Shown: in pieces, positions 8,401 through 64,000 of the stretch
Position numbering within the stretch: position 1 is the stretch's first letter
How the letters are laid out: the number at the start of each line of letters is the position of its first letter
From: Ostrea edulis
Taxonomy: Eukaryota
Length of the DNA: 64,000 bases
Direction: 5' to 3'
Assembly: GCF_947568905.1 (NCBI RefSeq)
Contig: NC_079169.1
Coordinates: 51,956,001-52,020,000, forward strand
Notes under the pieces: model-generated
Database searches by the model: none
The model's input: only the letters and a program-made list of their open reading frames with translations
What the model was told of the DNA's origin: nothing
Program-made: the position numbers and the translations under genes

Positions 8401-11400
8401 ATGTGACTTACACTAAACCAACAGACCATATCATGTGACTTATACTAAACCAACAGACCATATCATGTGACTTACGCTAAACCAACAGACCATATCATGT
8501 GACTTACACTAAACAATCAGATCATATCATGTGATTTACACTAAACAAATAGACCATATCATGTGACTTACACTAAACCAACAGACCATATCATGTGACT
8601 TATACTAAACCAACAGACCATATCATGTGACTTACACTAAACCAACAGATCATATCATGTGACTTACACTAAACCAACAGATCATATCATGTGACTTACA
8701 CTAAACCAACAGACCATATCAAGTGACTTACACTAAACCAACAGACCATATCATGTGACTTACATTAAGCCAACAGATTGCATCATGTGACTTACACTAA
8801 ACCAACAGACTGCATCATGTGACTTACACTAAACCAACAGACTGCATCATGTGACTTACACTAAACCAACAGACTGCATCATGTGACTTACACTAAACCA
8901 ACAGACTGCATCATGTGACTTACACTAAACCAACAGACTGCATCATGTGATTTACGCTAAATGAACAGATTATATCATGTGACTCTAACTAAACCAACAG
9001 ATTACTGGTATATCATGTGACTTACACTCTGATTGGGCCACTAACACTGAGGCCTGCAGCTGCCATTGGGGTTCCCCTGCCTCTTCTGCTAAGGCTAGAG
9101 ATTTGTCTCCGTGTTCCTTGGCAACCTGGTATTTTCCCATCTCCAAATAACATCGCCCAATTTCATGGTACAGCCATGTGCTCTCCAAAGCTGATTTTGA
9201 TAAAGGTAATTTCTTCTCCCATCTACAAAACAACAAAAACAGCATTCAGACCATCACCTCTTATAGACAGCTAAAAAATACATGTAATACACACACTGAT
9301 ATTGTAGATCCTTTGTAAAAACCTCGAGGAATGCTCATTAATTGATCATAACTCTTCATTGCCAATCCAGAACACTTCACAAAGTACTGGTACTTTCAAT
9401 GTGTTTGTAAAGGCCTGATTGCTATTTTTGGATACTGATACTGTAATAGTTTGTTACTGACACTGTGATAGCCTGGCTGTAGTCGCCCTTCCTGGCATGC
9501 ACTCTTCCCAGGTTGTCCAGTCCTCTGGAGCATGCCTCCTCCATGTCGCTGTAAAGAATCAGAGTAAACTTAGGCACACAAACTATCCAAAGATCAAGGT
9601 TTCTGTTCCAAATATACTTTCTATCTAAAAGTTATTGAAAATCTTTTAACAGAAATACTGAACTGGATTGATATATGGAGTATATTCTATTGTTCATGAT
9701 TGTAACTACACTACCCACCCCCAAACTCAGCATCTCTAAAACCAGCAAGACCAATCCAAGACTTACTGCTCCTCCCCAAGATTGTAGTCGATCTGATGCT
9801 GTTCTTGGGACTTGTCGTAGTTGCCCAGTTCCAGGTAAGCATTTCCTATACAGCTGTGTAGATTGGCAATGACCTCCATTTTGTTTGGTACAACATCCTC
9901 TGTGAAACCGTTGACTGTGTTCAGACATCTCTGGGCTCGCTTTAGACTCTCTGTATATTTACCTTCTACTTGAGCTGTCAAGAATTATATATTCAGTCTG
10001 AGTAAAGGCAACATTACACATTTACCCCAGCTATCCTTCATCTTCAAGACTGGATATATATCCAGCCCAATTCCAAATCAGAAATGCAACAAAAAATATG
10101 AAAAAATTATTGACATTTCTTCAATGAAACTTTCAAATGCTAACTCCATTACTTTGCAGTTAACATCATACAGCAAGGATTTTGTAACATCGTAAAGTAT
10201 GTTGTAATTTGTCAGTGTGGCTTTTTAAATTTTCTTAAATCAATGCTATTACCTCTATCCAATTTCGTACATTTCACTGATTCAGTATTTTACATATACA
10301 TGCATATATTGAAATTCAGTGGATTAATGTATAAATTGTTCGTGTTATATCCAAAGTTCAAAATAACCAATGTTGAACCATATAAATAATGTTAAGATCA
10401 ATATAACAAATACTTCAAAATAAGCAACTTCAATATAAGTGGAGTAGACTGTATTTTTTTCTTGACAAAGTATTAAAAGGTCTGTAACTCCAGTGGATGT
10501 TTGATAATAAATGAAAAACATGCATGATCCTATGATGCATAAAATTCATTGATAACTATGAATGTACTATTTGTTATCTTAACATAGAGCCATCAAATTT
10601 GGGAGGTAACCAAGGGCAGACGATTTAAATACTATAATTGGATCCCAATCCCAAGCTTTCAAAATAGGAGGGTCTGGGATAGAAAAATTGGGTAAGTCAG
10701 GACCCACACATTTTTTTATTTATGCCTCACTGATCACAACGTTAAACATTTATCTTTCATGCAATGTTAAACTACAGTCTACCTTGATCAATCCTTTCAA
10801 GTTCTCGGATGATGTAGTCATTTGGTGACAATTTTCCTGTGCTGGATTCCTCGACCCGTTTCTCTCGCCTCATCATAAGTTTCTCATGTTTACGGGCATA
10901 CATTGGTTTTTGCTGTCTCCAGAAATCGGTTCTGGTATCTAGGTAATTCAGGCCCTGGGACACCAGCCCAGAGATGGTTTTACCCACCGGAGTATTAGCA
11001 TCTGTAGGCATCAATGAATATAAAGAAATAAACATAATTCCATTATTATGCTTTTAAATTCAGTTATACATGATGTATTGTTACATGAAATACACTGCAT
11101 AAATATATGACATAATGTATACTGTATTGTTTATTCAACAAAATCTTTCTAAAGACTCCTTGAGTCCTGATTGGATGTACTGTTTTATACTGAAGCTCTG
11201 ATTGGGTGTATTGTTTTATACTGAAGTTCTGATTGGGTGTATTGTTTTATACTGAAGCTCTGATTGGGTGTATTGTTTTATACTGAAGCTCTGATTGGAT
11301 GTATTGTTCTATACTGAAGCTCTGATTGGATGTACTGTTTTATACTGAAGTTCTGATTGGGTGTATTGTTTTATACTGAAGCTCTGATTGGGTGTATTGT

Positions 11401-14400
11401 TTTATACTGAAGCTCTGATTGGCTGTACAGTGTATTGTTTTATACTGAAGCTCTGATTGGGTGTACTGTTTTATACTGAAGCTTTGATTGGGTGTAATGT
11501 TTTACTCTGAAGCTCTGATTGGATGTACTCTTCTACACATAAGCTCTGATTGGATGTTTTGTTTTATACTGAAGCCCTGATTGGATGTACTGTTTTGCAT
11601 TGAAGCTGTTTTCTATTCCTGAACTTTATTGAATGAAATCTTTAAGATTCAACATCCACATTCACACAGGCTGTTGGACTCAACATTCACATAGGCTGTT
11701 GTGAGAAGCGTATATGCTGACCTGTTTCTTTGAGTAGTTTTTCAAGGTACTGTCTGTCACCGTACAGCTCTCCTAGAAGCTGTTTGATCGTCTTCTCGTT
11801 CCCCACCGGCCGACTGACCTCCAGTTTTTTCTGGGTTTGCATACCTGGGCGGCCATATGTGTTGTAGGCAGGCTTCTTTATCTTCCTCTAAAATGTTAAC
11901 ATTGTACAATAAGTTGCAGTTTCCTTGTAATGATACCACAAGTTTTTAACATTTGGTCTAGGATTCATACAGCGGCAATGGTACATAACTTTTTGGCAGG
12001 TATTATACTACATCTATAAGTAATGCTGTTAGGTCTAAGCACAACAAGATCCTTGTTAAACAAGATGTGTTGGTGAAACAATGATGCCCCTGTACAGCAG
12101 TAAAGTAACTCTGGTACCAGACGCAAGGTTTTGTCACAAGGAATACACATGTGAAATAAGAAAGACATAGAATTAACCACTCAAAAGTTATGGACAAGGT
12201 AAACATTTTCAAAAGTATGTCAAACACCAAGGTCAAGGTCATGAGGTCAAACATTGTGGTACCAAAAGCAAGGTCTTGTCACAAGGAATATGTATGCAAA
12301 ATATGAAAGCTCTTATTTCCCTCCATTGAAAAGTTATGACCAAAGTTAAGTTTTTGCGGACAAACGGACAGACCAAAACTACATGCCCACAAACCTCTAA
12401 TTACAGGAGCATGAGAACTTTATATATCCTGTGGAATTACTCTTGTGGGGGTCAACTCTCATGGATGGCCAGGATTATACAGTTTTGTTGGGAATGAATT
12501 TTGTATATTGATAGATTATATGAATTCTGTATTTCATTGAGGTTTTATAGGTTTATAAAGGTACCCACAAAAACTGAGTACCCTAAAAGCTCAGTATCTA
12601 CAACAACTGAGTAATTACCCATGAAAACTAAGTACCTACAAAATTATTCCATAGTAAATGTTTTAAAACTTGAAACATATATATAGAGTTACTATCCAGT
12701 TACAGAATAAAGATACTTACCAAACAGAAAGTTATATAATTAATTACTGACCACACAGAAAGTTATATAATTAATTACTAACCAAACAGAAAGTTCAGAT
12801 TAATTACTAACCAACACAAAGTTATAATAAATTACTAACAAAACAGAAAGTTATAATTAAGAGCCATTTTCTGTAACCACTTTAAAAATTTGGCACGCAT
12901 AGTCACCGATTTTCACGAAACTCACCTGAATGAGACAACTATATATATAGCAATCGGATCATGCGCTCGTCTTTTCCCATAACTGGTAAGAAGACTTGGG
13001 CGTGGATCGGCGCAAGAATTGCATCAAATTGATGCATTTCTTCACCGGAAGCGCGCCTGTGGATGAGGTTAGAAGGCATAACCGAATCCCTGTATAATGT
13101 GTTATTTAGATTTTCACCACAGATTCAGTTTAGGTATCATTAACATCTTATTCACTCTAATATACAAAAATATAAGTGGAAATTGATAGTATTAGATGTA
13201 TGATATCTTACATTTAGATGCATTTGAAAGTACGTGTTTCATATTGTAATATACGACTGTTGAAGTCATAGTTGCATTTGTGTACACATAGCAACAGACT
13301 CTGATGGCGTTGAACCACATACGGGGTTCATTTGCGGTTATGGAAATAGCCGAGTAGTTACGATTGAACTATATAGCATATTAAAAAATATATATTTAGA
13401 AATTAGATGGTGATCATGGTTGCTATGGAAACAGGTACAATTTTATCAAATTTGGCTATTTTCTAGAATTTGGTAGTTTTTGCACGAAAGTTCAATATAA
13501 AACATTATGAATAGTTTTAAAATTTTAATTTTCATATTAAATGATAAAGTAGATCCTATATTTTTTATTTAAGGAAAAAAAATTAATAATGGTCAATCCT
13601 AAGTGATTTTTATAATTGAATAAATCTGAAAAATTGTGTTTGAATTCAATGCCTTTCATGTTTTAATAACTTTTATTTGCATCCACCTCAAATAAAGTAA
13701 CACAAGTTTTTAAATCAACTAATTTATGTTCTTCATAAATTTAAACTAAAACTTTTGGGAACCTGTCTATTTCCTACAATTTGCAGGGCCATAAATTAAC
13801 CTTCAATTTGGAGGAGGCAGGAAATTAGGCGGGGGTCTGGGGGCCACCCAGGCCCCCAGACGCTGAGCACATTTTGTGCACACTGAACATGTTTCGTGCA
13901 AAATCCTTGATTCTAGGGCCTTCTAAGATATTACTTGACTAACTCATTCTAAAAGAAAGATTTGGAATGCTTTTTAAGGGAAGTATCATGTTCTTAGTTA
14001 TTGGAAACAACATAAATTCTAATGAACTTTAAATTTTAATTTTTTTTGGCTCAAAAGTTGGAGGAGGCAGCTGCCTCCTCCGCCTCCATGTAATTTACGG
14101 CCCTGATTTGAAGTGAATGGTTTATGAAAAAATGCATTCTGTAACCAAGAGTTATTCCCCTTTGAAACTCTTCAATGTGATAAGTCAAGATTATATACTT
14201 TGAATACATAGAAAATTGTATTTTAAATTGCATTGAAAAATGCACCTCTAATGTCATATCATGATGAAATGCATCATTTTGTTTCCATGGAAACACAGCT
14301 TAGAAGGTAGATCCCCAAACATGTCTCATTGTAATATAAATGATAATAGTACTAGGTCTAATGTATGTTGAACAAGGATTTATATATTTCAAGCTGAATG

Positions 14401-17400
14401 TTGGAATTTTTACCCATTCAAATTTGCCTCTAAATTAGCTTTTTCAGAATGTATTAAACAACCCTTTTCCAAGTAGAATGAAAACATACTAGAAATATTT
14501 AAAACTTTAACTAAATATTAAACTAAATAATGAAAATGTTATATGATTTTATAAGAAGTCAAACAACTAAATCCAGCATAGTTGAATAAAAAGTGTAAGT
14601 ATTCATGTAAAAATTGACTCTTTTGTGACCTGAATGGCATGCACAGGTTACCATGGCAATAGAGTTGCATAGCAACCAAATTATGATGGTTTTACATTAC
14701 TTATGCCAGATTAAGTCGATATGCCAAATTTTGAAGGAAAAAAAAATTGGTGACAGTGCGTGCCAGACTCCTTTAATGTTTAACTGGTTACTGAGAATGG
14801 CTCTTAATTACTAACTAAACAGAAAGTTATGATTACTAACCAAACAGAAAGTTATAATTCATTACTAACCAAACAGACAATTACTTTTCAAATGGAAATT
14901 TACTAATTACAATACAGATACAGACATAAAATTTACTACACATACAGAAAGCTACTATACAGAAATAAAGTTACAATCCATTGTCATAATCTGATGTTGT
15001 AAATGTGTTTTATTTAACTATGTCTTTAGTGTTTTCTAAAACCATTGTCATAATCTGATACTGTAAATGTATTATATTTTGTGTATTTAGCACTTTCTAA
15101 ATGTACACTACTTAAAAGCATACATATTCAAGACATTTATCAATCTAATGTACTTGATTTAGCTGTAGCTGCTTCCTGTGAAAGGCGGTAACTAGCAAAA
15201 TACAATATGTTTACAGTAATAGCTAAATTTTCATCAAATGTAATATCAAAACATACTTCATCTTGTTTTGCGAAAAAGGACAAATCTCCCTCTGTTGTAA
15301 GTTTCACTTTGTCTGGGGCTGGAAGAAATCCCAAATGTTACATGTAACCATGGTACTGTGCAGTGCAAAATAGATCCAACATTTACTACATTTTTATGTA
15401 AACAAACAAAACATTCTAAAACTGACTGGAATAAGCTTAATATGTAAAGGTCTTAGGAAGAAAACAATCTAAAACTGACTGGATTAAGCTTACTATGTAA
15501 ACAATGAAAACATTCTAAAACTGACTGGAATAAGCTTACTATGTAAAGGAAGGAAACATTCTAAAACTGACAGGAATAAGTTTACTATGTAAACAATGAA
15601 AACACTCTAAAACTGACTGGGATAAGCTTACTATGTAAAGGAAGGAAACATTAATCTAAAACTGACTGGAATAAGCTTACTATATAAACAATGAAAACAT
15701 TCTAAAACTGATTGGAATAAGCTTAATAAGTAAAGGAAGGAAACATTCTAAAACTAACTGGAACAAGAGGTACTGTGAGCAATGCTCACTAAGAATACCC
15801 CCCGCTTACCCCAATCTCCCAAAGGGTGTTGGTAATAGGTATAAACTACCTCTTTTCTGAGTGTAAAAAACAAATGGCATTACAAACCGAACCATATTGC
15901 TACTTCGATGTCCAGTGCGCGTGACCTTTGACCTTTTGACCCCAAAATCGATAGGGAACATCTTCATCCCATGGGTAGTCCATATGTATGATATGGTGAC
16001 TGTATGTGGAAAGGATAACGCTTTAGAGCCCGGAAACCATATTGCTACTTCGATGTCCAGTGTGCTTGACCTTTGACCTTTTGACCCCAAAATCGATAGG
16101 GAACATCTTCATCCCATGGGTAGTCCATATATATGATATGGTGACGGTAGGTGGAAAGGATAATGCTTTAGAGCCCGGAAACCATTGCGTCTACAGACGG
16201 ATGGACGGACGGACAGACAGACGGACAACCCGATTCCAGTTTCCCCCCCCCCCCCCCCCCCCCCACAACTTGTTGCGGGGGGTATAATAAGCTTACTATG
16301 TAAACATTCTATACCTAACTGGAATAAGCTTAATATGTAAACATTCTAAATCTAACTGGAATAAGCTTACTATATAAACAATGAAAACATTCTAAAACTG
16401 ACTGGAATAAGCTTACTATGTAAAGAAGGAAACATTCTAAAACTGACTGGAGTGGATTAAGCTAACTAAGTAAACAATGAAAACATTCTAAATCTAACTG
16501 GAATAAGCTGACAAAAGGTTTACCTCCTACTGAGTTGTCAATGGCTTCCTGAGCCTTCTGTATACCAAGTCGGAACTCTTGGAGCTCTGGTCGAAGTTTG
16601 TGACCTCTGTGATAGAAGACAAGGGAAAGCTCAAAATCTCCCTGGTAGTATAAGGCCTGAGCTTTCTGGTACACACCCTGAAAAAGCAAGCACAGCAGAC
16701 TAGGGAATTAACCTGTATATGGATAAATGTCAGTGAACTAAAGATACCTCCCCCCTCCCCCATCAGAATGACTCCAATGCTGATTTTTTGCTGAGAAAAT
16801 GCAATGGACCAGAGCAGGATTCAAACAAGGGTCCCCTGAATCTCCAGTCAAGTGTTCTACCAATTGAGCTACCTGGCCATTGGGATCGACCTCATCTGAC
16901 CACCACATTTGTGTATGTACATACAACTGTGTATTTGTTTGCTGGATTTTTTGTGAGATACTACAATATGCTATAAACTCATGTTCAACACACACATTCA
17001 TTTAATGTTTGAGTTGAAATAGAATTACTACACATGAACTTGAATTGTAAAAATTCATTTAGGACAGTATGTACTAAAATGATCAAGTGGGAAGAATCAA
17101 CAATCCTGAGGAGATTTTTACTTTCATTCCTGACACACAAAATTCAATTGAAATTCTCAACAATTCACTATGTGTAGAATTCAGAATATGAATGATAACT
17201 TTATCAGCAGTCTTAATCACAATTAGAAAATCATCATAATGATTATAGTTAAGTTATTAATTTAGACAGAAAATGAATGATAGATAGAATAAATGTGAAT
17301 GAATGTAATTCATCAACAGGTAAAATTGATGTATTTACTTGTACAAAGATCATGTCCAAAAAAAATATTGTATTCATTTGCAAAATTTATATAATATGGC

Positions 17401-55666: not shown

Positions 55667-56439
55667 GTTATTTTGTTAAGATAAATTTAAACACCTGTGA
55701 CGTTGCGAACTGGTCCTTTATTGTCTTTTATTTTTATATTTCAAATTGGTTAAGAAAATAATTATTTTGATTAAAATCGTAATATTTCGACTTCTATTCA
55801 TATTTTTTATAACTTTAATCCACAATTTTCCCCAAATTTTGTTTTTACCATTAGATTTACCTTAGTTAAGCATTGTAAACATAAAAAATGGGAAAATAAA
55901 ATTTGAAAATTTTCACCTTAATCGTGTCCATGGCCCTTTAATGATCAAAATCAACTGTCAGATGTGTTTCACAAAAAATAGAGGTTATATATTATGACAA
56001 AAGCTCATTATATAGTTTATTATTTGTTTTGGGTACAAAGATTGGGGTGTGTTATTGTTTAAGAAATTTTCAAATAAATGAATATGTATATCACATTTCA
56101 AATATTCTTCGGGTAAACTGTGCCATTTAAAAGTTAAATTTGTGACTGTGCAAAGTCAATATGCTTTACATTACAAAATTGACATTTCACTGGTTTGTTT
56201 GTAAACATAAAAAGATTCGAGTCTTGTTAATTTACATAACACAGAGTAAAGACCAAAATATTGCTCATATCCTTGCATTCACAGGGTCCCATTTGGTTGT
56301 AAACATTAAATGAGTTATACTTGCCATGTTTAACATCAGAATGGAAAAACGTGAACCAGTTCCTTTAAAGATACATGTAGTGTAATGAAATGGTACTGTC
56401 GTATCTTAAGCTTATAATTGTCATAAGTCAGCAGGCATG

Positions 56440-57311
56440 CCATGGAAGCCATCTTAGGACTAAGACCATATCTTAAGATAAACTTAGGATGTATCTTAGT
56501 CCTAAGTGAGGCCTCGGTGGCTAACTTAAGATATGTCCTAAGATATCTCCTAAAGTTAAGACATCACTAGACCCGTCCTAAGTTAAACTTAAGATATGTC
56601 TTAACTTTGTTTATGTATATAATGTCATTGTGGCTGCCGCCTAACTGTGTGTGCAAGGGGGAATAATCCGGAGTGATCACTGTTTAAGAGATTACGACAA
56701 TAACTTTGATTAGATGTTCTTAGATGACCATGCAGAGCATCGTGAGTAAATACCGACTCACGCGGCCAATGATACATAATGTATATATGTGCTTTGTTTG
56801 AAAACAACCTTCACCGGCCAACAATGAGGTCACATTCTCTAAATAATGACAGCAGTAGGATTTTTCAAGAGATCGTCGCAGACATTCATAATATTTCAAG
56901 ACAAAGCACAGAAAATGATATTAATGATGTTTTAAATTGCTTAGTCGGAATTTCCAAACAATACATACATATGTCAGTGAATGTTAAAGAATTAAACAAA
57001 ATAAAGAAAGGGTTTTTATGAAATTTCTCATTTTCCAAACATTGTTGGAGCAATAGATTGTACTCGTATTAAATTCAAATCCCCACTCACCAATGAATAC
57101 ATATATGTAAATGGGAAAAAAAACACAATATAAAGTTGAATTATCTTGCTCGTGTTCTATACATGTATATCGACATGTAACAAATTTAAAAAAAATGATA
57201 GGGATATTTTTTAAAATCATGTATATTTTTTTAGTCTTGCAGTGGTGTAATGTCTAAGACGGGAGTAGTAGAGGTTTCGTTCCTCTGGCCTCTCTCTCTC
57301 TCTCTCTCTCT

Positions 57312-57372
<61 letters not shown>

Positions 57373-57850
57373 TCTTATTAAAACAAATACTTTTAAAAAT
57401 AAATTTTGATATAATTACCTTGTATGATCTATATATAATTTTACAAGTCATTAAAACAGTTTAAGTTTTAAGTCACTGATAATATCGTCCATTGGTATGT
57501 AATGTTAAAATTCATAAGAATTTTCCTAAGAATCCCTTAAGTCTATCCAAGTTAGGATAGTCCTAAGAGAACTTCTATGTCCATCTTAAGATATGTCTTA
57601 GGACCATCCTAAGAGTCATCCTAAGATATCTTAAGTCATGTCTTACGATTATTCCTAGGAACCACACATCTTAGAAAACTCTTATGATTTATCTTATGAC
57701 AGATCTTAAGAAACTCTTATGATTTATCTTATGACAGATCTTAAGAAACTCTTATGATTTATCTTAAGACACATCTTAGAAAACTCTTATGATTTATCTT
57801 ATGACAGATCTTATGAAACTCTTATGATTTATCTTATGACAGATCTTAAG
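56440..57850. repeat. CTTAAG/CTTAGG-rich repeat region, probable decayed TIR element, with a 35-bp tandem repeat at ~57660-57850
   Basis: Motif clusters at 56450-56610 and 57520-57850; unit AAACTCTTATGATTTATCTTATGACAGATCTTAAG. Confidence 0.5.
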
Positions 57851-58104
57851 ATAGTTTTGAACCATTTCACTTTAATTCCTTGCAGAAGTTTGACAACCGA
57901 TCGCAGAAGAACATGTCAGCTACATTGCATCTACTTGTATATAGCCTATCATTTGCCATCCATTTCTTATTTAAGCTATTCCACGTGCCTTTAATGACTT
58001 TCTGTTTCACAATGAACTTTCACTTTTGACTTCTGACCCCGATCGATCAAACGCACTTTACAATGGAGACTCAGCTGCAGTTTGCATATGCTCTTCAACA
58101 TGTA

Positions 58105-58431
58105 CGGCCGCCGCGGTGGTCTAGAGGTAGAGCGTTCACCCCGCATGAGGAAGGTCGGGGTTTAAATCCCGGCAGCGACAAACCTAAATCGCTAAAACAA
58201 GTAGTGACAATTCCATCACCAAACGCTCGGCATCACTGAGGTGTGAATGTCACGGGTCCTCGGAAATAACCTTAAAAACGGATGTCCCATGTCACAGCAG
58301 GTGTGTCACGCTAAAAACCCTCACTGCTCAATGGCCGTAAGCGCCGAGCATAAGCCTAGATTTGAAGTCCTTCACCGGTCTTGGTGACGTCTCCATATGA
58401 GGGGGAAATTCTCGAGAGGGACGTTAAACAA
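58105..58431 (+). mobile_element. Full-length tRNA-head SINE
   Basis: A box TGGTCTAGAGG, B box GTTTAAATCCC, core GTCACAGCAGGTGTGTCACGCTAAA; (CAAT)n tail resumes after the inserted MITE. Confidence 0.8.
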
Positions 58432-58436
58432 GATAC

Positions 58437-58633
58437 CATGCGCGGATCTAGAGAGGGATCGGGGGGGGGGGGGGGGGTCCGGACCCTGGAATTTGCAAAG
58501 ATAAAAAAAATTACAATATATATATAAGATTTATAAGAAAAATTAGTTGACTGTTATTATATCACGGGTTCGATTTTGTGAAAAGGTTCGACCCCCCCCC
58601 CCCCCCTGGAAAAAAATTCTGGACCCGCGCCTG
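58437..58633. mobile_element. MITE with 5-bp TSD inserted in the SINE tail
   Basis: CATGCGCGGATCTAGA / TCTGGACCCGCGCCTG; TSD GATAC on both sides. Confidence 0.75.
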
Positions 58634-59365
58634 GATACCATCAATTAATCAATCAACATGCACAACCCAACCCCCGCCTCAGACAAATTATCATCAATAA
58701 AACTCATTTCAGTGATTTTCATAACAGATGCAAGCTTTCAAGCACACTAAATCTCATTTTATAGTACAATTGTCTATTCCAAATTTTCTCCTGCCACCAT
58801 AGACTGACCGAGTGACCTGTAATAATCCATCCACTTAGTATATGGTGGTTCTAGGGCATCCTGACGTTAGTTAACATGTTTGCTATGTATATGATTTCCA
58901 GTACAAAGAAAATTCTTCCTTTTGATTGACATGAAGAGAAGTAGGACATGTATAAACTACGTAGAGCATGTGGTTTTCTTAGAATAAACTTTAATCGCAA
59001 TGCCTGATGGAGCCGAACATTACGCACAATTTTATCTTTCCTACTTCAAGTTTACACACTGTGCTAAAACTGAAACTTTAATGAATTGTATTCACACAAT
59101 ATGGGACAATATGTAAAGGCCACTGTTTTCATGAGCGTTGTACATATTGCTTCTGTCTAAGATTAGATATGTGTTTTCTATTAACTGTTGTGCATCGACA
59201 CATGCGGTTATGCTTCGTTACTTCTCAAGTTCAGAAGATAAGATTCTTGCAATTTCATTTCACTGAGAAGAAAGAGTTTACTTGGAGGGTAAACAAAATC
59301 GCTTTAATTTGGATCTAGTTACAGACGGGAATTTCGTCCAATGGATCTGACATTGTGGGGAATCT

Positions 59366-59555
59366 ATGGAAGATTTTCTAGACATTCGATCGAGCCCTAA
59401 GTTGTCGTCTGCGCTTCTGTTGACAGCGGCGTTTGTTCACGTGATCGGATACTCATCCACTCATTGGTCAGACGGGGGTGTGTTTTACACGGGACTGTGG
59501 AAAACGTGTATCCTGACCCCCACGTTTCACTGTCTTGAGGATGCTTACACGGCAG
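59366..59555 (+). CDS. Claudin/PMP22-like first exon A (TM1 plus extracellular loop 1), no private downstream exons seen
   Basis: MEDFLDIRSSPKLSSALLLTAAFVHVIGYSSTHWSDGGVFYTGLWKTCILTPTFHCLEDAYTA; W-GLW-C-C motif; 190 nt, phase-1 GTGAGT donor. Confidence 0.7.
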
Positions 59556-60303
59556 GTGAGTCGACTCAAACCCACTATATAACATACACAAACTCTAAAC
59601 TGCGCACTACCGTCATTCCGTGAGTACGTTTCATAGGAAGTTGTAAAAATCTTCAAATTTCAAACATCAGCAAATTGGAAAACCTGTATATTATGTAGTC
59701 ATTTTATAATTTGCTCTCTGAATGATCTACTAATTATCAAAATTAAAAATTTTCTTTGCCTTGACCTGGCCCCAGGATCATGTAACAAACTCAGACTTAA
59801 GTCAAACTTTCAATCAGCCGTAAGATGTTCATTACTTTAGAACTGAAACTCTTAATTTTGCAGACCCTAAAAATTTGACGAAGCAACATTGAATAACAAT
59901 ATTTTTTTTTTGGAATCACTGACTTCTCAATCATTTCATCGCAATATTCAGATTTTGACTTAAGCTTAAAGGTGTTTCATGATCCTGGAGCCAGAACACC
60001 TTTGTCACACATGCAGCGTCTTCTGCCGTTTAGTGACGAGTGAAGGCTCTGATGAATTACAGTTCGTATTTGTTGTTAGCGTCATCCGTTTGTGTTGAAT
60101 TACTTTTAGGAACTTCTATATGTTGTGACATCAATGATTTTCAAATTCAATCATACCCGAATTGCATGATGGGTCTTTCATTATCCGAGCTTACACCCCC
60201 AGTAGATTCTTTTACTTCATGGCGATTCCATTACCCCCATGGGGCACCTAGCATTAACCTCCTAACACACAAATAAACACAATCTGTGTGTGTGGATGAG
60301 AAG

Positions 60304-63296
60304 ATGGCGGGGTTTGGCAGCGCAAGTTTGTTGGTGAAGATTGTCTTCATCTGTGTCATTGTAGCAGTTTTGTTTCATCTGATTGGATTCTCTACGGCCT
60401 ATTGGACCAATCGTTCATCCTATGTCTATTCTAATCACTGGGGCCTGTGGAAAAGCTGTCGTATTTATTGCTCTTCAATGGGGACAAAATCCGGTAATTT
60501 AAGTTAGCAGTTTTGTACAAATCTGACCAAAAACAAATTACTTGTATTATTACAATTTATGGTTATGTACAATGTTCTTGTTTTATTCTAATTAATCAAA
60601 TATTTGATTGCATGTTTAATTGTCTCTTGTATATGTATTGTTAAATTCCTATGTAAAATTTGAAATGAACAGAGATGCATGTAAAATTTGTTTTAATTAT
60701 TTTTCTTTGGAACAATGATTCAAATGTTACAATCAAAGGAGTTAATATATGCATGAAGTAGATAATAAGACGGTTGATTTTGTGTTTATGAAGTTGGATG
60801 ATCAGGTTTAATTACAACCCGCTAAGTGGATAACAAATGATCTTCAACAAACAGCCCTGGGATATACTGAGCTTTTCGTCAGATTTCTTTGATGAAGGAA
60901 CGTGCAGATGTGGGCGTTCGCGGAGTAGTAGCTATGAAGGTGGTGAGATATTTTTGTGACGACACAAGTGCATTCTAACTTTAAAACAACTTTTCAAAAC
61001 TCAGAAGTTGTTACCAAATGACAGTATTTGTTTCCTCTGAGTTTTGTTCATGTTGATACAAATTCGTCATCATAGCATTACACCAGATGTTTGTTAAATG
61101 CTTTTGTTAAGTGAATCACTTTGCCAGACGTGGATTGTAATCTGGGACGTCTCTTCTGTTCCCTAGCAATAGAAGAAAGAGACAAAGGTATTTTTGACGA
61201 GCCATTAACAGATATTGTTTTGTTTTTTTTTTAACATGGGAGACTTTGATCCTCTGCCAAAGCAAAACAGGGTTTTTCTGTTTTATTATTGACGGAATAA
61301 CGGATTTTCATCTGAAATGAGATAGTATCAGAAAATTCAGTGCATTATGAACATCAATACAATACATGTAGATGTCAAAAACATAGTTAAAAACGTTTAC
61401 GTTAATATCTACATAACAATGACACGTGATCGGTAGCATTGGCACGTGATAATAGCATTGACACGTGATAATAGTATCGACACGTGCTATTCTAAAAGTC
61501 TTGTTCATTTCTGGAATAGCCATTACTACTATCTTCGACGTAATATTTAATCGCATCTGCAATGCGATATTAACAATTTTTGTGTTACATTATGATGTGG
61601 ATGTTATTGTTTAATGTTGTGTTATTATGTCGCGCTAGCTATGAACATTACGCTCCAGATTTATTAACTGTTTACGACAAAATCCCATTGGAATGAAAGT
61701 ATTTTGAGGTAATTCATGAGCTAAAATAGTTAAGTGAGTTATTCTGATTTCTCGGTATTGTTTAGTACATTTATGTGAACACTGCAAAGGGTAATTTCAG
61801 TCGCTAACATGTATATAACTGTTGTAATCTACCCTACATTTATTGTTAACATCAAAGAGAGAAGGGTATTCTTCTTACGGAGTTTGTCCTTGAGATTAAT
61901 TAATCATCTAGATCGATTAATCACCTAGATTAATATGTCAATGTCTGTTTTTCTATTTGCTTGCTTCATTATAGGTCCATGGATTACTTAGAAATTGATT
62001 AAAGTTAATTAAAGGAATGATTTTGAAGACATGGTGCATGTATTTAGTACTTATTAGAACATTGACGTACATGAAATAAAGAGTGGAGTTCTACCCAATC
62101 ATAATCACCAGCTTCGAAATTCAGAGGAGATATGCATTTGTAAATACGGCTATATAACAGTATATCTGTTCCTCTCCTTGTTGATTGATCTGACATTTTA
62201 ATTGGTTACCATGGTGTGATTTGTCTTGACGTTTTGATTGGTTGAAATTGGCATGGTGATATATCCATGTCTCTAGCGTGATTTGTCTGACGTTTTGATT
62301 GGTTTCAATTGGTTTAGGGCTATATGAAGTCCTTTAGCGCGATTTGCCTAATGTATTGAATGGTTAGCTTGGTATTATACCCTGGCCGTTATATGTTTTG
62401 ATTGGCTGGCCTGGAGCTATACCCCGGAATTCCGACGTTTTGATTGGTTCGGCTGAAAGCTATACCCAGGAATTCCGACGTTTTGATTGGCTGGCCTGGA
62501 GCTATACCATGGAATTCCGACGTTTTAATTGGTTGGCTTGAAGCTATACCCAGAAATTCAGATGTTTTGATTGGCAGGTTTGGGGCTACATTTAGGCTTT
62601 CAAGAGCGTGGTCTGATATTTGATTCTTTGATTTGTAGTTATGTCCATGCTTTTCTAGACGATTAATCTGACTGTTTACACCTAGATCTCCAACATGATT
62701 TATTTGTTGAGACGATTTGTATATTTTCCTTATTTTGCGGGGTTGATTTGGAGTTATGTGCTTTTTAAAAGACTATTTTTCTTATGTTTTTTCTTCGTTT
62801 TGTCAGGTTGGTTTGGTGCTACCCAGGCCTTTGAGACGATCGGACTGATTGCTGGATTTGTTGGTCTGATACTAACCATCCTATACATCTTCGTAACCCA
62901 AACAGCTGGTAATCGAGTGCTGTTTATAATCGACCTCCTAGCGGTGGGAATAGCAGGTATGTAAATTAGCGATGGAGGTCACGAGTACGAAAATATCCGT
63001 ATCGATTTCTCATCAAATTAATATCAGACAATGGATTCTATGACAAAGGAGAATCTGAAATATATCATTTGTTAAGCAATTTACCTGCTCATTATGTTAA
63101 TTTCATCATGTATTGAATCAATTTTTATTTTCATTTCTCAGCTGGATCAACCCTCCTTGGGGTCATAATATATGGTGCAAATGCCAGCGCCCTCTCGTGG
63201 TCGTTCGCACTGGCGGTCATAGCCGGACTGGTATATGGTGTGGCCGGAGCCTTGATGGTCATCCATCTGCTCAAACCAAACCTCGTCCAGGGCTGA
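60304..63296 (+). CDS. Claudin/PMP22/EMP-like four-TM protein (exon 1B plus exons 2 and 3), 164 aa
   Basis: Exons 60304-60493, 62807-62956, 63142-63296, phases match. HLIGFSTAYW, WGLWKSC..C, WFGATQAFETIG, ALSWSFALAVIAG. Confidence 0.85.
62230..62580. repeat. ~42-bp minisatellite in claudin-like intron
   Basis: GACGTTTTGATTGGCTGGCCTGGAGCTATACCC.GGAATTCC, about 8 copies, decayed at the left edge. Confidence 0.8.
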
Positions 63297-63779
63297 TGCA
63301 GTAGGGAAATATGTCTCCCGAGATGTTCTGGCTGCTATAGGAGTGGGCGTTTTATGAGATAGATAGAAGGGTGTTGCATTTTGCAGCATCGAATCACATC
63401 TTCCAAGCGCACGATATAGTTTTATTTTTGATTTCTTTTATAGCTAAACTATTTTTAATTAAAATTATGATAGGATTTTTTAAATATACACGTGCATGTC
63501 TTCCTTGTAAGAAGGAAATTGTAGATAGTTTGGGACTTTGTATCATGTTTTTACAACCGGTAATGTAAAATAAATATTTCTATTTATGTATTATATCTAT
63601 TGTTATCATTGGGCCATTCAAAGCCTGCGTGCTGAGGGATGACGTACATAGAATATTCCAGTATCGCCTCCAATCCATTTAAGTTTACCATGGCCAAAAT
63701 TCACCTCTAGACTAAGAGTTACATGTAGTAGAGCCTTAGGAAATATTATCCCTACTCTGAAGATTACATTGTATACTAT

Positions 63780-64000
63780 TGAATACAGAGGACTTCAATG
63801 TCAACAGATGGCGCTCTCTCCACTAGTATTCTGAATGTCAATAGATGGTGCTCTCTCCACTAGCACTCTGAATATCAATAGACGGTGCTCTTTCCAGTAG
63901 TAATCTGAATTTCAATAGATGTCGCTCTCTCCACCATCAATAGATGGCGCTCTTTGTACTAGTATTCTGAATGTCAATAGATGGCGCGCTCTCCACTAGC
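63780..64000. repeat. ~37-bp minisatellite running off the window end
   Basis: ATTCTGAATGTCAATAGATGGCGCTCTCTCCACTAGT, about 6 copies. Confidence 0.85.

What the first reader, a model, noticed from the sequence alone, without database searches (positions are those of the whole stretch)
59366..63296. Claudin-like locus with two divergent variable first exons and one constant region
Seen: exon 1A (59366-59555) and exon 1B (60304-60493) are both 190 nt and 63 codons. Each encodes TM1 plus the W-GLW-C-C extracellular loop 1, shares H25-x-I-G-x-S30-xxx-W34 at identical positions, and ends in a phase-1 donor. They are otherwise highly diverged. Only one exon 2/exon 3 set is visible. Established: ECL1 sets claudin selectivity and adhesion, and variable first exons on constant exons are known for protocadherin and UGT1 clusters. 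Inference: alternative promoters would swap the whole ECL1 on a shared TM2-4 scaffold. I do not know of this arrangement for claudins.
Basis: partly seen in the sequence, partly recalled or inferred. Interest (0 to 1): 0.8.

Follow-up and report, generated by a model that had tools for sequence, protein, structure and literature searches.

The report
Oyster claudin-superfamily gene, two first exons
A small four-pass membrane protein gene of the flat oyster, a distant relative of claudins, has two interchangeable first coding exons that give one shared protein body two different first outer loops; this is real and kept in all oysters examined, but human claudin-10 and claudin-18 use the same trick and databases already list the oyster isoforms.

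Summary
Exon 1A (59366-59555) and exon 1B (60304-60493) each start with ATG, are 190 nt long, end in a phase-1 GT donor, and encode TM1 plus a W-GLW-C-C loop. Only one exon 2 (62807-62956) and one exon 3 (63142-63296) exist in the window.

- **RNA evidence.** Spliced contigs of a roughly 95%-identical relative show 59555>62807 (two runs) and 60493>62807 (one run). DNA runs show neither.
- **Locus identity.** This is Ostrea edulis LOC125647783; RefSeq isoform X2 equals 1A+e2+e3.
- **Conservation.** The 1A-1B-e2-e3 layout is present in the Crassostrea virginica, Magallana gigas and Saccostrea cucullata loci. RefSeq lists isoform pairs in six oyster species. Both first exons are intact, and 1A has dN/dS of 0.09-0.21. 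Scallop and pearl-oyster relatives have one first exon.
- **Family.** The protein belongs to the PMP22/EMP/MP20/claudin superfamily and sits nearer LIM2/MP20 and TARPs than classic claudins.

CLDN10 (exons 1a/1b) and CLDN18 (1a/1b, two promoters) do exactly this. My verdict is a new, probably independently evolved member of a known kind. Separate promoters are inferred, not shown. This scan also noted alternative-first-exon genes elsewhere in this genome (neuroligin, Rab24).

The parts
59160..59365 (+). Conserved non-coding block upstream of exon 1A, taken as 5'UTR and/or promoter-proximal region
   Evidence: The block aligns across Ostrea, Saccostrea, Crassostrea and Magallana at 70% mean column identity, although synonymous sites are near saturation. 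It carries 2- and 4-nt indels, so it is not coding. A spliced contig of run X2 is colinear from 59193. M. gigas cDNA contigs are colinear up to 832 nt upstream of the ATG.
59366..59555 (+). Exon 1A: ATG, short N-terminus, TM1, and ECL1 with W34-x8-GLW-x2-C48-x7-C56; phase-1 donor
   Evidence: The joint 59555>62807 appears in runs X1 and X2. The exon equals the first 63 aa of RefSeq isoform X2, P0109. Amino-acid identity among four oyster genera is 76-84%, with dN/dS 0.09-0.21 and the CAG|GTGAGTC donor conserved.
59765..59990 (.). High-copy repeat (transposon-like) in the 1A-1B interval; not part of the gene product
   Evidence: Summed contig depth in the DNA runs rises from about 10 to over 1000, with many diverged contigs and loose ends.
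60189..60303 (+). Region upstream of exon 1B, the candidate 1B promoter or 5'UTR
   Evidence: Conserved between Ostrea and Saccostrea over about 110 nt. In Crassostrea and Magallana only about 20 nt before the ATG is alike, next to a (CT)n run. No start-site data exist.
60304..60493 (+). Exon 1B: ATG, TM1, and ECL1 with W34-x12-GLW-x2-C52-x3-C56 and an N-R-S sequon at N36; phase-1 donor
   Evidence: The joint 60493>62807 appears in run X1, whose contig is colinear back to 60313. Orthologous 1B-first RefSeq isoforms exist in C. virginica, S. cucullata, S. echinata, M. gigas and M. angulata. Weak Pfam hits match the N-terminal part of PF00822 and PF13903.
60365..60493 (+). Part of exon 1B that RefSeq isoform X1 (207 aa, P0110) uses as an internal exon after 1A, via an acceptor ...cattgtag|CAG
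   Evidence: The P0110 sequence, plus the frame and acceptor check. The contigs show no 59555>60365 joint.
62807..62956 (+). Constant exon 2 (TM2, intracellular loop, start of TM3)
   Evidence: Single copy in the window. It is the acceptor for both first exons, and the 62956>63142 joint appears in X1 and X2. dN/dS is 0.06-0.10.
63142..63296 (+). Constant exon 3 (rest of TM3, short ECL2, TM4, stop TGA)
   Evidence: dN/dS is 0.05-0.15.
63297..63590 (+). 3'UTR with AATAAA at 63569-63574; the end is inferred
   Evidence: The X2 contig runs to 63508. The AATAAA was read.

Best explanation
This is one gene, Ostrea edulis LOC125647783, for a 164-aa four-helix membrane protein of the PMP22/EMP/MP20/claudin superfamily. 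It has two mutually exclusive first coding exons. A transcript beginning with 1A or with 1B is spliced to the same exons 2 and 3. The two proteins therefore share TM2, TM3, ECL2 and TM4 but differ in the N-terminus, TM1 and the whole first extracellular loop.

Exon 1B resembles the single first exon of relatives in scallops and other molluscs and is probably the original. Exon 1A is probably an upstream duplicate made in the oyster lineage. It diverged strongly once and has since been held nearly constant.

Each exon most likely has its own promoter, so a cell chooses which outer loop the protein displays. Shown: the exon anatomy, both splice joints, the conservation and the fold. Inferred: the separate promoters, the direction of the duplication, and any difference in function such as adhesion or partner choice at cell contacts.
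For: **Splicing**
- Contigs of runs X1 and X2 skip 59556-62806 with GT..AG ends. X1 also skips 60494-62806. Both skip 62957-63141. DNA runs X3 and X6 show none of these joints and cover the introns evenly.
- In M. gigas, eight cDNA contigs from eight runs join 1A>e2>e3 and skip 1B. This product is on record in 55 blocks of the collection.

**Annotation and synteny**
- P0109 (RefSeq X2) equals the window's 1A+e2+e3.
- C. virginica isoforms X1 and X2 are reproduced exactly from locus L001, with different first exons and identical exon 2 and 3 coordinates.
- The order 1A-1B-e2-e3 holds in L001, L002 and L005. Isoform pairs are annotated in six oyster species.

**Selection**
- 1A has dN/dS of 0.09-0.21.
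- 1B is intact in all four genera, with dN of 0.18-0.45.
- The constant exons have dN/dS of 0.05-0.15.

**Family and fold**
- The family profile matches LIM2/MP20 at 1e-14, TARP gamma-2 at 6.5e-13 and claudin-18 at 2e-8.
- 14 of 25 relatives hit PF00822.
- AlphaFold gives mean pLDDT 88 for the 1A form and 90.5 for a 1B form, with the same four helices plus an ECL1 sheet.
- Foldseek's top matches are TARP gamma-2 (TM 0.78), LHFPL4 and MP20.

**Origin**
- Scallop and Pinctada loci have one first exon, and it scores better against 1B than against 1A.
- All seven hits below 1e-10 in the representatives search are 1A-type. Those with a species label or an exact window match are oysters; the rest are unlabelled contigs.

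**Promoters**
- A roughly 200-nt non-coding block before 1A is conserved in four genera.
- The 1A 5'UTR is colinear with the genome, with no upstream splice.
Against: - No RNA of O. edulis itself was laid. The runs with joints come from a relative (about 95% identity) and are listed only as 'RNA?'.
- The 1B>e2 joint rests on one contig in one run, with 30 nt on the exon-2 side.
- O. edulis RefSeq has no 1B-first isoform. Its X1 joins 1A to an acceptor inside 1B.
- No start-site data exist, so a shared promoter is not excluded. The sequence upstream of 1B is poorly conserved in Crassostrea and Magallana.
- The tree of first exons is unresolved, with a long-branch artefact, so the direction and date of the duplication are inferred from similarity scores and taxon sampling only.
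- The ECL1 charge difference seen in O. edulis (-2 against +4) is not conserved, so a claudin-10-like charge switch is not supported.
Confidence: 0.8

Rival explanations
1. One promoter, two mutually exclusive exons. Transcription always starts upstream of 1A, and 1B is reached by splicing from a donor in the 1A 5'UTR or from an unseen upstream exon. The choice would then be made by the splicing machinery, not by promoters.
For: No start-site data exist. The upstream region of 1B is weakly conserved outside Ostrea and Saccostrea. The X1 contig for 1B stops at about 60310, so its 5' end is unseen.
Against: 1A transcripts are colinear with the genome for at least 173 nt and up to 832 nt upstream of the ATG, with no splice. 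One search lists no joint into the 1B region. The AG just before the 1B ATG is absent in C. virginica.
Confidence: 0.13
2. In O. edulis, 1B is used only as an internal cassette, as in RefSeq isoform X1 (1A, then 60365-60493, then e2). That would give a 207-aa protein with two ECL1-like modules, and no 1B-first isoform would exist in this species.
For: P0110 (XP_048730554.2) has exactly this structure, and the acceptor at 60364/60365 is in frame with a pyrimidine-rich tract.
Against: The relative's contig runs colinear from 60492 back to 60313, which is 52 nt upstream of that acceptor, and no 59555>60365 joint was seen. The 1B ATG, N-terminus and TM1 are conserved in all four genera, and five other oyster species have 1B-first RefSeq isoforms. 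The fused product carries only half a TM1 between its two loops, which does not fit the four-helix fold. It may be a minor splice form or a gene-model artefact.
Confidence: 0.05
3. Two separate or nested genes, or 1A is a decaying relic exon.
For: None beyond the read-through ORFs that gene callers produced from 1A (P0001, P0004).
Against: There is only one exon 2/3 set. The 1A>e2 joint is direct. 1A is the better conserved of the two first exons, with dN/dS 0.09-0.21 and a conserved donor.
Confidence: 0.02

Closest known systems
Human/mouse CLDN10 (claudin-10a and claudin-10b from exon 1a or 1b)
   Same: There are two alternative coding first exons. Each encodes TM1 and the first extracellular segment, and each joins the same downstream exons, so the isoforms differ only in TM1 and ECL1 (PMC6862131).
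   Different: Claudin-10 is a classic tight-junction claudin whose isoforms have opposite ECL1 charge and opposite ion selectivity. The oyster protein is a 164-aa MP20/PMP22-sized relative. No conserved charge switch is present and its function is unknown. A common origin of the two exon pairs is unlikely, because scallop and pearl-oyster relatives have a single first exon.
CLDN18 (claudin-18.1 lung and 18.2 stomach; exons 1a/1b with promoters P1a/P1b)
   Same: Alternative first coding exons replace the N-terminal 69 residues or so, including ECL1. Two independent promoters give tissue-specific isoforms (PMC12384651).
   Different: CLDN18 isoforms are 91% identical overall, whereas the oyster first exons are 25% identical. 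The promoters are proven for CLDN18 and only inferred here.
PMP22 (exons 1A/1B)
   Same: Same superfamily and similar size. Two promoters and two alternative first exons (PMC3110552).
   Different: The PMP22 first exons are non-coding, and both transcripts encode one protein. Here the first exons are coding and change the protein.
LIM2/MP20 and TARP gamma subunits
   Same: These are the best sequence-profile and fold matches: 9cbv at 1e-14 and TM 0.73, TARP gamma-2 at 6.5e-13 and TM 0.78. They share the four-helix bundle with a small ECL1 sheet and the W-GLW-C-C motif.
   Different: Identity is about 20%. I know of no ECL1-swapping first exons for them (own knowledge, not searched). No functional link to lens junctions or glutamate receptors was tested.
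Protocadherin and UGT1A variable-exon clusters
   Same: Variable first exons are joined to constant exons.
   Different: Those are arrays of many exons, each with its own promoter. Here there are only two exons, and no further copy lies in the 59 kb upstream.

Membership tests
PMP22/EMP/MP20/claudin superfamily (Pfam PF00822 / PF13903) | Four transmembrane helices in a protein of about 160-220 aa | tested here: met
   AlphaFold models give helices at 7-30, 64-92, 100-127 and 133-157, with mean pLDDT 88 and 90.5.
PMP22/EMP/MP20/claudin superfamily (Pfam PF00822 / PF13903) | W-(x)n-GLW-(x)n-C-(x)n-C motif in the first extracellular loop | tested here: met
   Present in both 1A and 1B. GLW is invariant, and W34 and both Cys are at least 90% conserved across 25 relatives.
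PMP22/EMP/MP20/claudin superfamily (Pfam PF00822 / PF13903) | Score at or above Pfam's gathering threshold | tested here: inconclusive
   P0109 has no hit at E<=0.001. Its C. virginica ortholog scores 26.6 bits against a cut-off of 26.7. Single exons score 13-15 bits. 14 of 25 aligned relatives match PF00822.
PMP22/EMP/MP20/claudin superfamily (Pfam PF00822 / PF13903) | Homology to solved members by profile and by fold | tested here: met
   The profile matches LIM2 at 1e-14, TARP gamma-2 at 6.5e-13, CLDN18 at 2e-8, CLDN19 at 2.5e-7 and LHFPL4 at 2.8e-7. Foldseek gives probability 1.00 and TM 0.73-0.78.
Classic claudins (tight-junction strand formers) | C-terminal cytoplasmic tail ending in a PDZ-binding motif (typically -YV) | tested here: not met
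   The protein ends ...KPNLVQG about 7 residues after TM4. Among the relatives, only the Argopecten paralog P0116 ends in -HYV.
Classic claudins (tight-junction strand formers) | ECL1 of about 50 residues, and closest similarity to claudins rather than other branches | tested here: not met
   ECL1 is about 30 residues. LIM2 and the TARPs score better than any claudin.
Classic claudins (tight-junction strand formers) | Forms paracellular strands or a barrier | not testable with these tools
   Needs expression and freeze-fracture or permeability assays.
Alternative coding first-exon genes of the CLDN10/CLDN18 type (gene organisation) | Two or more first exons, each with its own ATG and each encoding TM1+ECL1 | tested here: met
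Alternative coding first-exon genes of the CLDN10/CLDN18 type (gene organisation) | Each first exon is spliced to the same exon 2, and use is mutually exclusive | tested here: met
   Joints 59555>62807 and 60493>62807. M. gigas cDNAs skip 1B. C. virginica isoforms share exon 2/3 coordinates. One caveat is RefSeq X1 of O. edulis, which joins 1A to part of 1B.
Alternative coding first-exon genes of the CLDN10/CLDN18 type (gene organisation) | Separate promoters with different expression | tested here: inconclusive
   A conserved block lies upstream of 1A, and conservation upstream of 1B is weaker. Run X1 holds contigs of both exons and run X2 only of 1A, but contigs cannot show absence. No start-site data exist.
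Protocadherin/UGT1-type variable-exon arrays | A tandem array of many variable exons | tested here: not met
   Only two copies in the window and in each of three other oyster loci.

The most novel reading that the evidence does not exclude
True oysters would have evolved an ECL1-swapping switch independently of vertebrate claudin-10 and claudin-18, in an uncharacterised MP20/PMP22-like tetraspan. The first exon was duplicated in tandem. The new copy (1A) changed rapidly and was then frozen, at 76-84% identity across four genera. The old copy (1B) keeps the ancestral N-terminus, but its loop evolves two to four times faster. This would be convergent evolution of the same modular solution in the claudin superfamily, and it would imply two distinct extracellular partners or adhesion states at oyster cell contacts.
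Probability: 0.5. Interest if true: 0.45.

Novelty: new member of a known kind. Interest (0 to 1): 0.3.

Why it matters
It shows that swapping TM1 and ECL1 through alternative first exons is not confined to vertebrate claudins. The same design recurs in a distant branch of the superfamily in molluscs, where junction proteins are barely studied. It gives a clean natural pair of isoforms for asking what the first loop of these small tetraspans does in oyster epithelia (mantle, gill).

It also flags a likely gap in the O. edulis annotation. There is no 1B-first isoform, and the 207-aa X1 model is doubtful. It does not open a new kind of mechanism.

Tried and rejected
- **More variable exons.** tblastn and a motif scan of all six frames of the window found none.
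- **Second exon 2/3 set.** None found.
- **Pfam on single exons.** Only sub-threshold hits. I did not send my own joined exon model to any search tool. I used the database proteins P0109, P0006, P0111 and P0112 instead. The only joining I did myself was a local translation to check the reading frame. dN/dS was computed exon by exon.
- **Tandem full-gene duplicate in scallops as the source of 1A.** The Argopecten paralog P0116 lies 3.6 Mb from P0115 and has its own constant exons, so it is not a tandem neighbour.
- **Tree of first exons.** Unresolved. The 1A clade sits on a branch of 3.3 changes per site and is pulled into the Patella sequences, which I treat as a long-branch artefact.
- **Claudin-10-like charge reversal.** Net ECL1 charge for 1A against 1B is -2/+4, +1/+2, -3/+1 and 0/0 in the four species, so it is not conserved.
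- **Search for 1B-first cDNA contigs in Magallana.** P0113 and P0122 are on record only in genomes. The P0123 contigs are unspliced read-through.
- **Other checks.** Rfam found nothing in 56000-64000. No paper mentions these LOC or XP identifiers.
Full report
**What is in the sequence**

On the + strand, 59366-59555 and 60304-60493 are both 190-nt open stretches that begin with ATG. They end in good GT donors, CAG|GTGAGT and CCG|GTAATT, after 63 codons plus one base. The two peptides are 25% identical. They share H25, I27, G28, S30 and W34 at the same positions, and then GLWK-x-C and a second Cys.

A six-frame BLAST of the whole window finds only the reciprocal match (E 4e-5). A motif scan for W..GLW..C..C finds only these two places.

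Downstream there is one exon 2 (62807-62956, acceptor ...ttttgtcag|G) and one exon 3 (63142-63296, stop TGA). No second copy exists in the window. Either first exon gives an open 164-codon frame.

**Is it spliced as proposed?**

I laid four public runs on 58600-63700.

- Runs X3 and X6 come from the same organism as the window, at about 100% identity. They cover the whole stretch evenly like DNA and show no intron-sized joints.
- Runs X1 and X2 come from a relative at about 95% identity in the exons. They are listed only as 'RNA?', but they have depth only on the exons.
- Their contigs skip 59556-62806 (GT..AG; X1 and X2), 60494-62806 (GT..AG; X1 only) and 62957-63141 (both runs).
- The contigs break about 30 nt into exon 2. 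A de Bruijn assembler is expected to break there when two transcripts share that exon.
- The 1B contig is colinear back to 60313, so it covers almost the whole of 1B.
- The 1A contig of X2 is colinear back to 59193.

They were seen in a close relative, not in O. edulis RNA itself.

**Identity of the locus and independent support**

A profile of the two exon peptides searched against 1.84 billion representatives gave 86 hits. A follow-up word search with the best full-length hit gave named proteins.

P0109 is Ostrea edulis XP_055995868.1, 'uncharacterized protein LOC125647783 isoform X2'. It is letter-for-letter the window's 1A+e2+e3.

RefSeq lists a 1A-type and a 1B-type isoform of one gene in five other oysters:

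- Crassostrea virginica (LOC111114826 X2/X1)
- Saccostrea cucullata
- S. echinata
- Magallana gigas (LOC105325887 X3/X2)
- M. angulata

I fetched three of these loci. In C. virginica (L001), both isoforms are reproduced exactly with first exons at 10001-10190 or 13435-13639 and the same exons 14421-14570 and 16742-16896. M. gigas (L002) and S. cucullata (L005) have the same order 1A-1B-e2-e3, and the 1A donor CAG|GTGAGTC is conserved.

In M. gigas, eight cDNA contigs from eight different runs join 1A>e2>e3 and skip 1B. Their 5'UTR is colinear with the genome for up to 832 nt, and the product is on record in 55 blocks of the collection. An HSP70 gene lies upstream of the M. gigas locus.

**An oddity in the O. 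edulis annotation**

RefSeq isoform X1 of O. edulis (P0110, 207 aa) is not 1B-first. It is 1A joined to an acceptor inside 1B (...cattgtag|CAG at 60364/60365, in frame), followed by e2 and e3.

That product would carry two loop modules separated by half a TM1, which does not fit the fold. No 59555>60365 joint was seen. I regard it as a minor splice form or a model artefact, but I could not test it in O. edulis RNA.

**Selection**

These are pairwise Nei-Gojobori estimates among the four genera, computed exon by exon.

| Exon | Amino-acid identity | dN | dN/dS |
|---|---|---|---|
| 1A | 76-84% | 0.09-0.16 | 0.09-0.21 |
| 1B | 51-75% | 0.18-0.45 | 0.19-0.38 where computable; dS mostly saturated |
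| e2 | 73-86% | 0.09-0.17 | 0.06-0.10 |
| e3 | 69-88% | 0.08-0.24 | 0.05-0.15 |

Exon 1B also has a 5-codon indel in the loop. Both first exons are intact in all four genera. 1A is as constrained as the constant part. 1B changes two to four times faster, mostly in the loop.

**Family**

- Single exons give only weak, correctly ordered Pfam hits.
- The C. virginica ortholog scores 26.6 bits on PF00822 against a cut-off of 26.7. More distant relatives found by the search score 30-58 bits on PF00822 or PF13903. 14 of 25 aligned relatives match PF00822.
- A profile of the 25 relatives matches solved structures in this order: LIM2/MP20 1e-14, TARP gamma-2 6.5e-13, claudin-18 2e-8, claudin-19 2.5e-7, LHFPL4 2.8e-7, claudin-15 5e-7.
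- AlphaFold models of the 1A isoform (P0109, pLDDT 88, pTM 0.82) and of a 1B isoform (S. cucullata P0112, pLDDT 90.5, pTM 0.86) give the same four helices. The ECL1 sheet has three strands in the 1A form and four in the 1B form.
- Foldseek's best matches are TARP gamma-2 (TM 0.78), LHFPL4 and MP20 (TM 0.73).

The protein therefore belongs to the PMP22/EMP/MP20/claudin superfamily. It is not a classic claudin, because its ECL1 is about 30 residues, it has no C-terminal tail or YV motif, and claudins are not its nearest relatives.

**What differs between the two loops**

- The spacing from W34 to GLW is x8 in 1A. In 1B it is x12 in Ostrea and Saccostrea and x17 in Crassostrea and Magallana.
- The Cys-Cys spacing is x7(8) in 1A against x3 in 1B. 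This is conserved in all four genera.
- 1B has an N-x-S/T sequon in Ostrea and Saccostrea only.
- The net charge difference (-2 against +4 in O. edulis) is not conserved.

The difference is therefore one of loop shape rather than a claudin-10-like charge switch.

**Origin**

Scallop loci (L003, L004) and a Pinctada locus (L006) have a single first exon. It begins MAGF/MGF like 1B and scores better against 1B than against 1A.

All seven hits below 1e-10 in the representatives search are 1A-type. The ones that carry a species label or match the window exactly are oysters, and the rest are unlabelled metagenome or Logan contigs.

The tree of first exons is unresolved, but it shows the 1A clade on a very long stem with short tips and the 1B clade on a short stem with longer tips.

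The most economical reading is a tandem duplication of exon 1 in the oyster lineage, fast divergence of the upstream copy, and then constraint. This is an inference. Orthology of the Pinctada gene was not established.

**Promoters**

About 200 nt before the 1A ATG (window 59160-59365) are conserved across the four genera at 70% column identity, even though synonymous sites are near saturation. The block has 2- and 4-nt indels, which rule out coding. It contains a CACGTG or CACATG motif and an AGATAAG motif.

Upstream of 1B, about 110 nt are shared by Ostrea and Saccostrea only. Run X1 holds contigs of both first exons and run X2 only of 1A, which hints at regulated choice, but contigs cannot show absence.

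Separate promoters are therefore likely but not shown.

**Comparison with what is known**

- Human CLDN10 uses either exon 1a or 1b, and its isoforms differ in TM1 and the first extracellular segment (PMC6862131).
- CLDN18 has first exons 1a and 1b driven by two independent promoters, and its isoforms differ in the first 69 residues including ECL1 (PMC12384651).
- PMP22 has two promoters with non-coding exons 1A and 1B (PMC3110552).

What is new is the host: an uncharacterised mollusc branch, and probably an independent origin.

I found no paper naming these loci. Notes of this scan report alternative first coding exons in two other genes of this genome, neuroligin and Rab24. I did not test those.

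**Verdict**

It is a new member of a known kind, already modelled by RefSeq in related oysters, and of modest interest.

Noticed in passing
window 61420-61486: A 19-nt tandem unit, repeated 3.5 times, sits in the 1B-exon 2 intron. Each copy carries a CACGTG (E-box-like) palindrome (sequence). A CACGTG or CACATG motif also sits in the conserved block upstream of 1A.
   Followed up: no
window 59765-59990: A very high-copy repeat lies between 1A and 1B. Summed depth in the DNA runs rises from about 10 to over 1000, with many diverged contigs. It is probably a small transposon.
   Followed up: no
window 62216-62575 and 63797-63999: Tandem repeats with 61-, 42- and 85-nt units lie in the last part of the 1B-exon 2 intron. 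A 37-nt repeat array begins about 500 nt downstream of the stop codon and runs to the window's end.
   Followed up: no
window 60365 (RefSeq XP_048730554.2, P0110): The O. edulis RefSeq isoform X1 (207 aa) joins exon 1A to an acceptor inside exon 1B, while no 1B-first isoform is annotated. Five other oyster species do have a 1B-first isoform. This is possibly an annotation artefact.
   Followed up: partly
L004 (Argopecten irradians, P0116): A scallop paralog lies 3.6 Mb from the ortholog. It has a divergent N-terminus and, alone among the 25 relatives, a claudin-like C-terminal -HYV motif.
   Followed up: no
L001 13185-13434 and L002 10848-11097: A long (CT)n microsatellite lies just upstream of exon 1B in Crassostrea and Magallana. 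It is absent in Ostrea and Saccostrea.
   Followed up: no
window 59171-59365: The frame of exon 1A stays open for about 65 codons upstream of its ATG in O. edulis, which led prokaryote-style gene callers to extended products (P0001). Indels among species show that this stretch is non-coding.
   Followed up: partly
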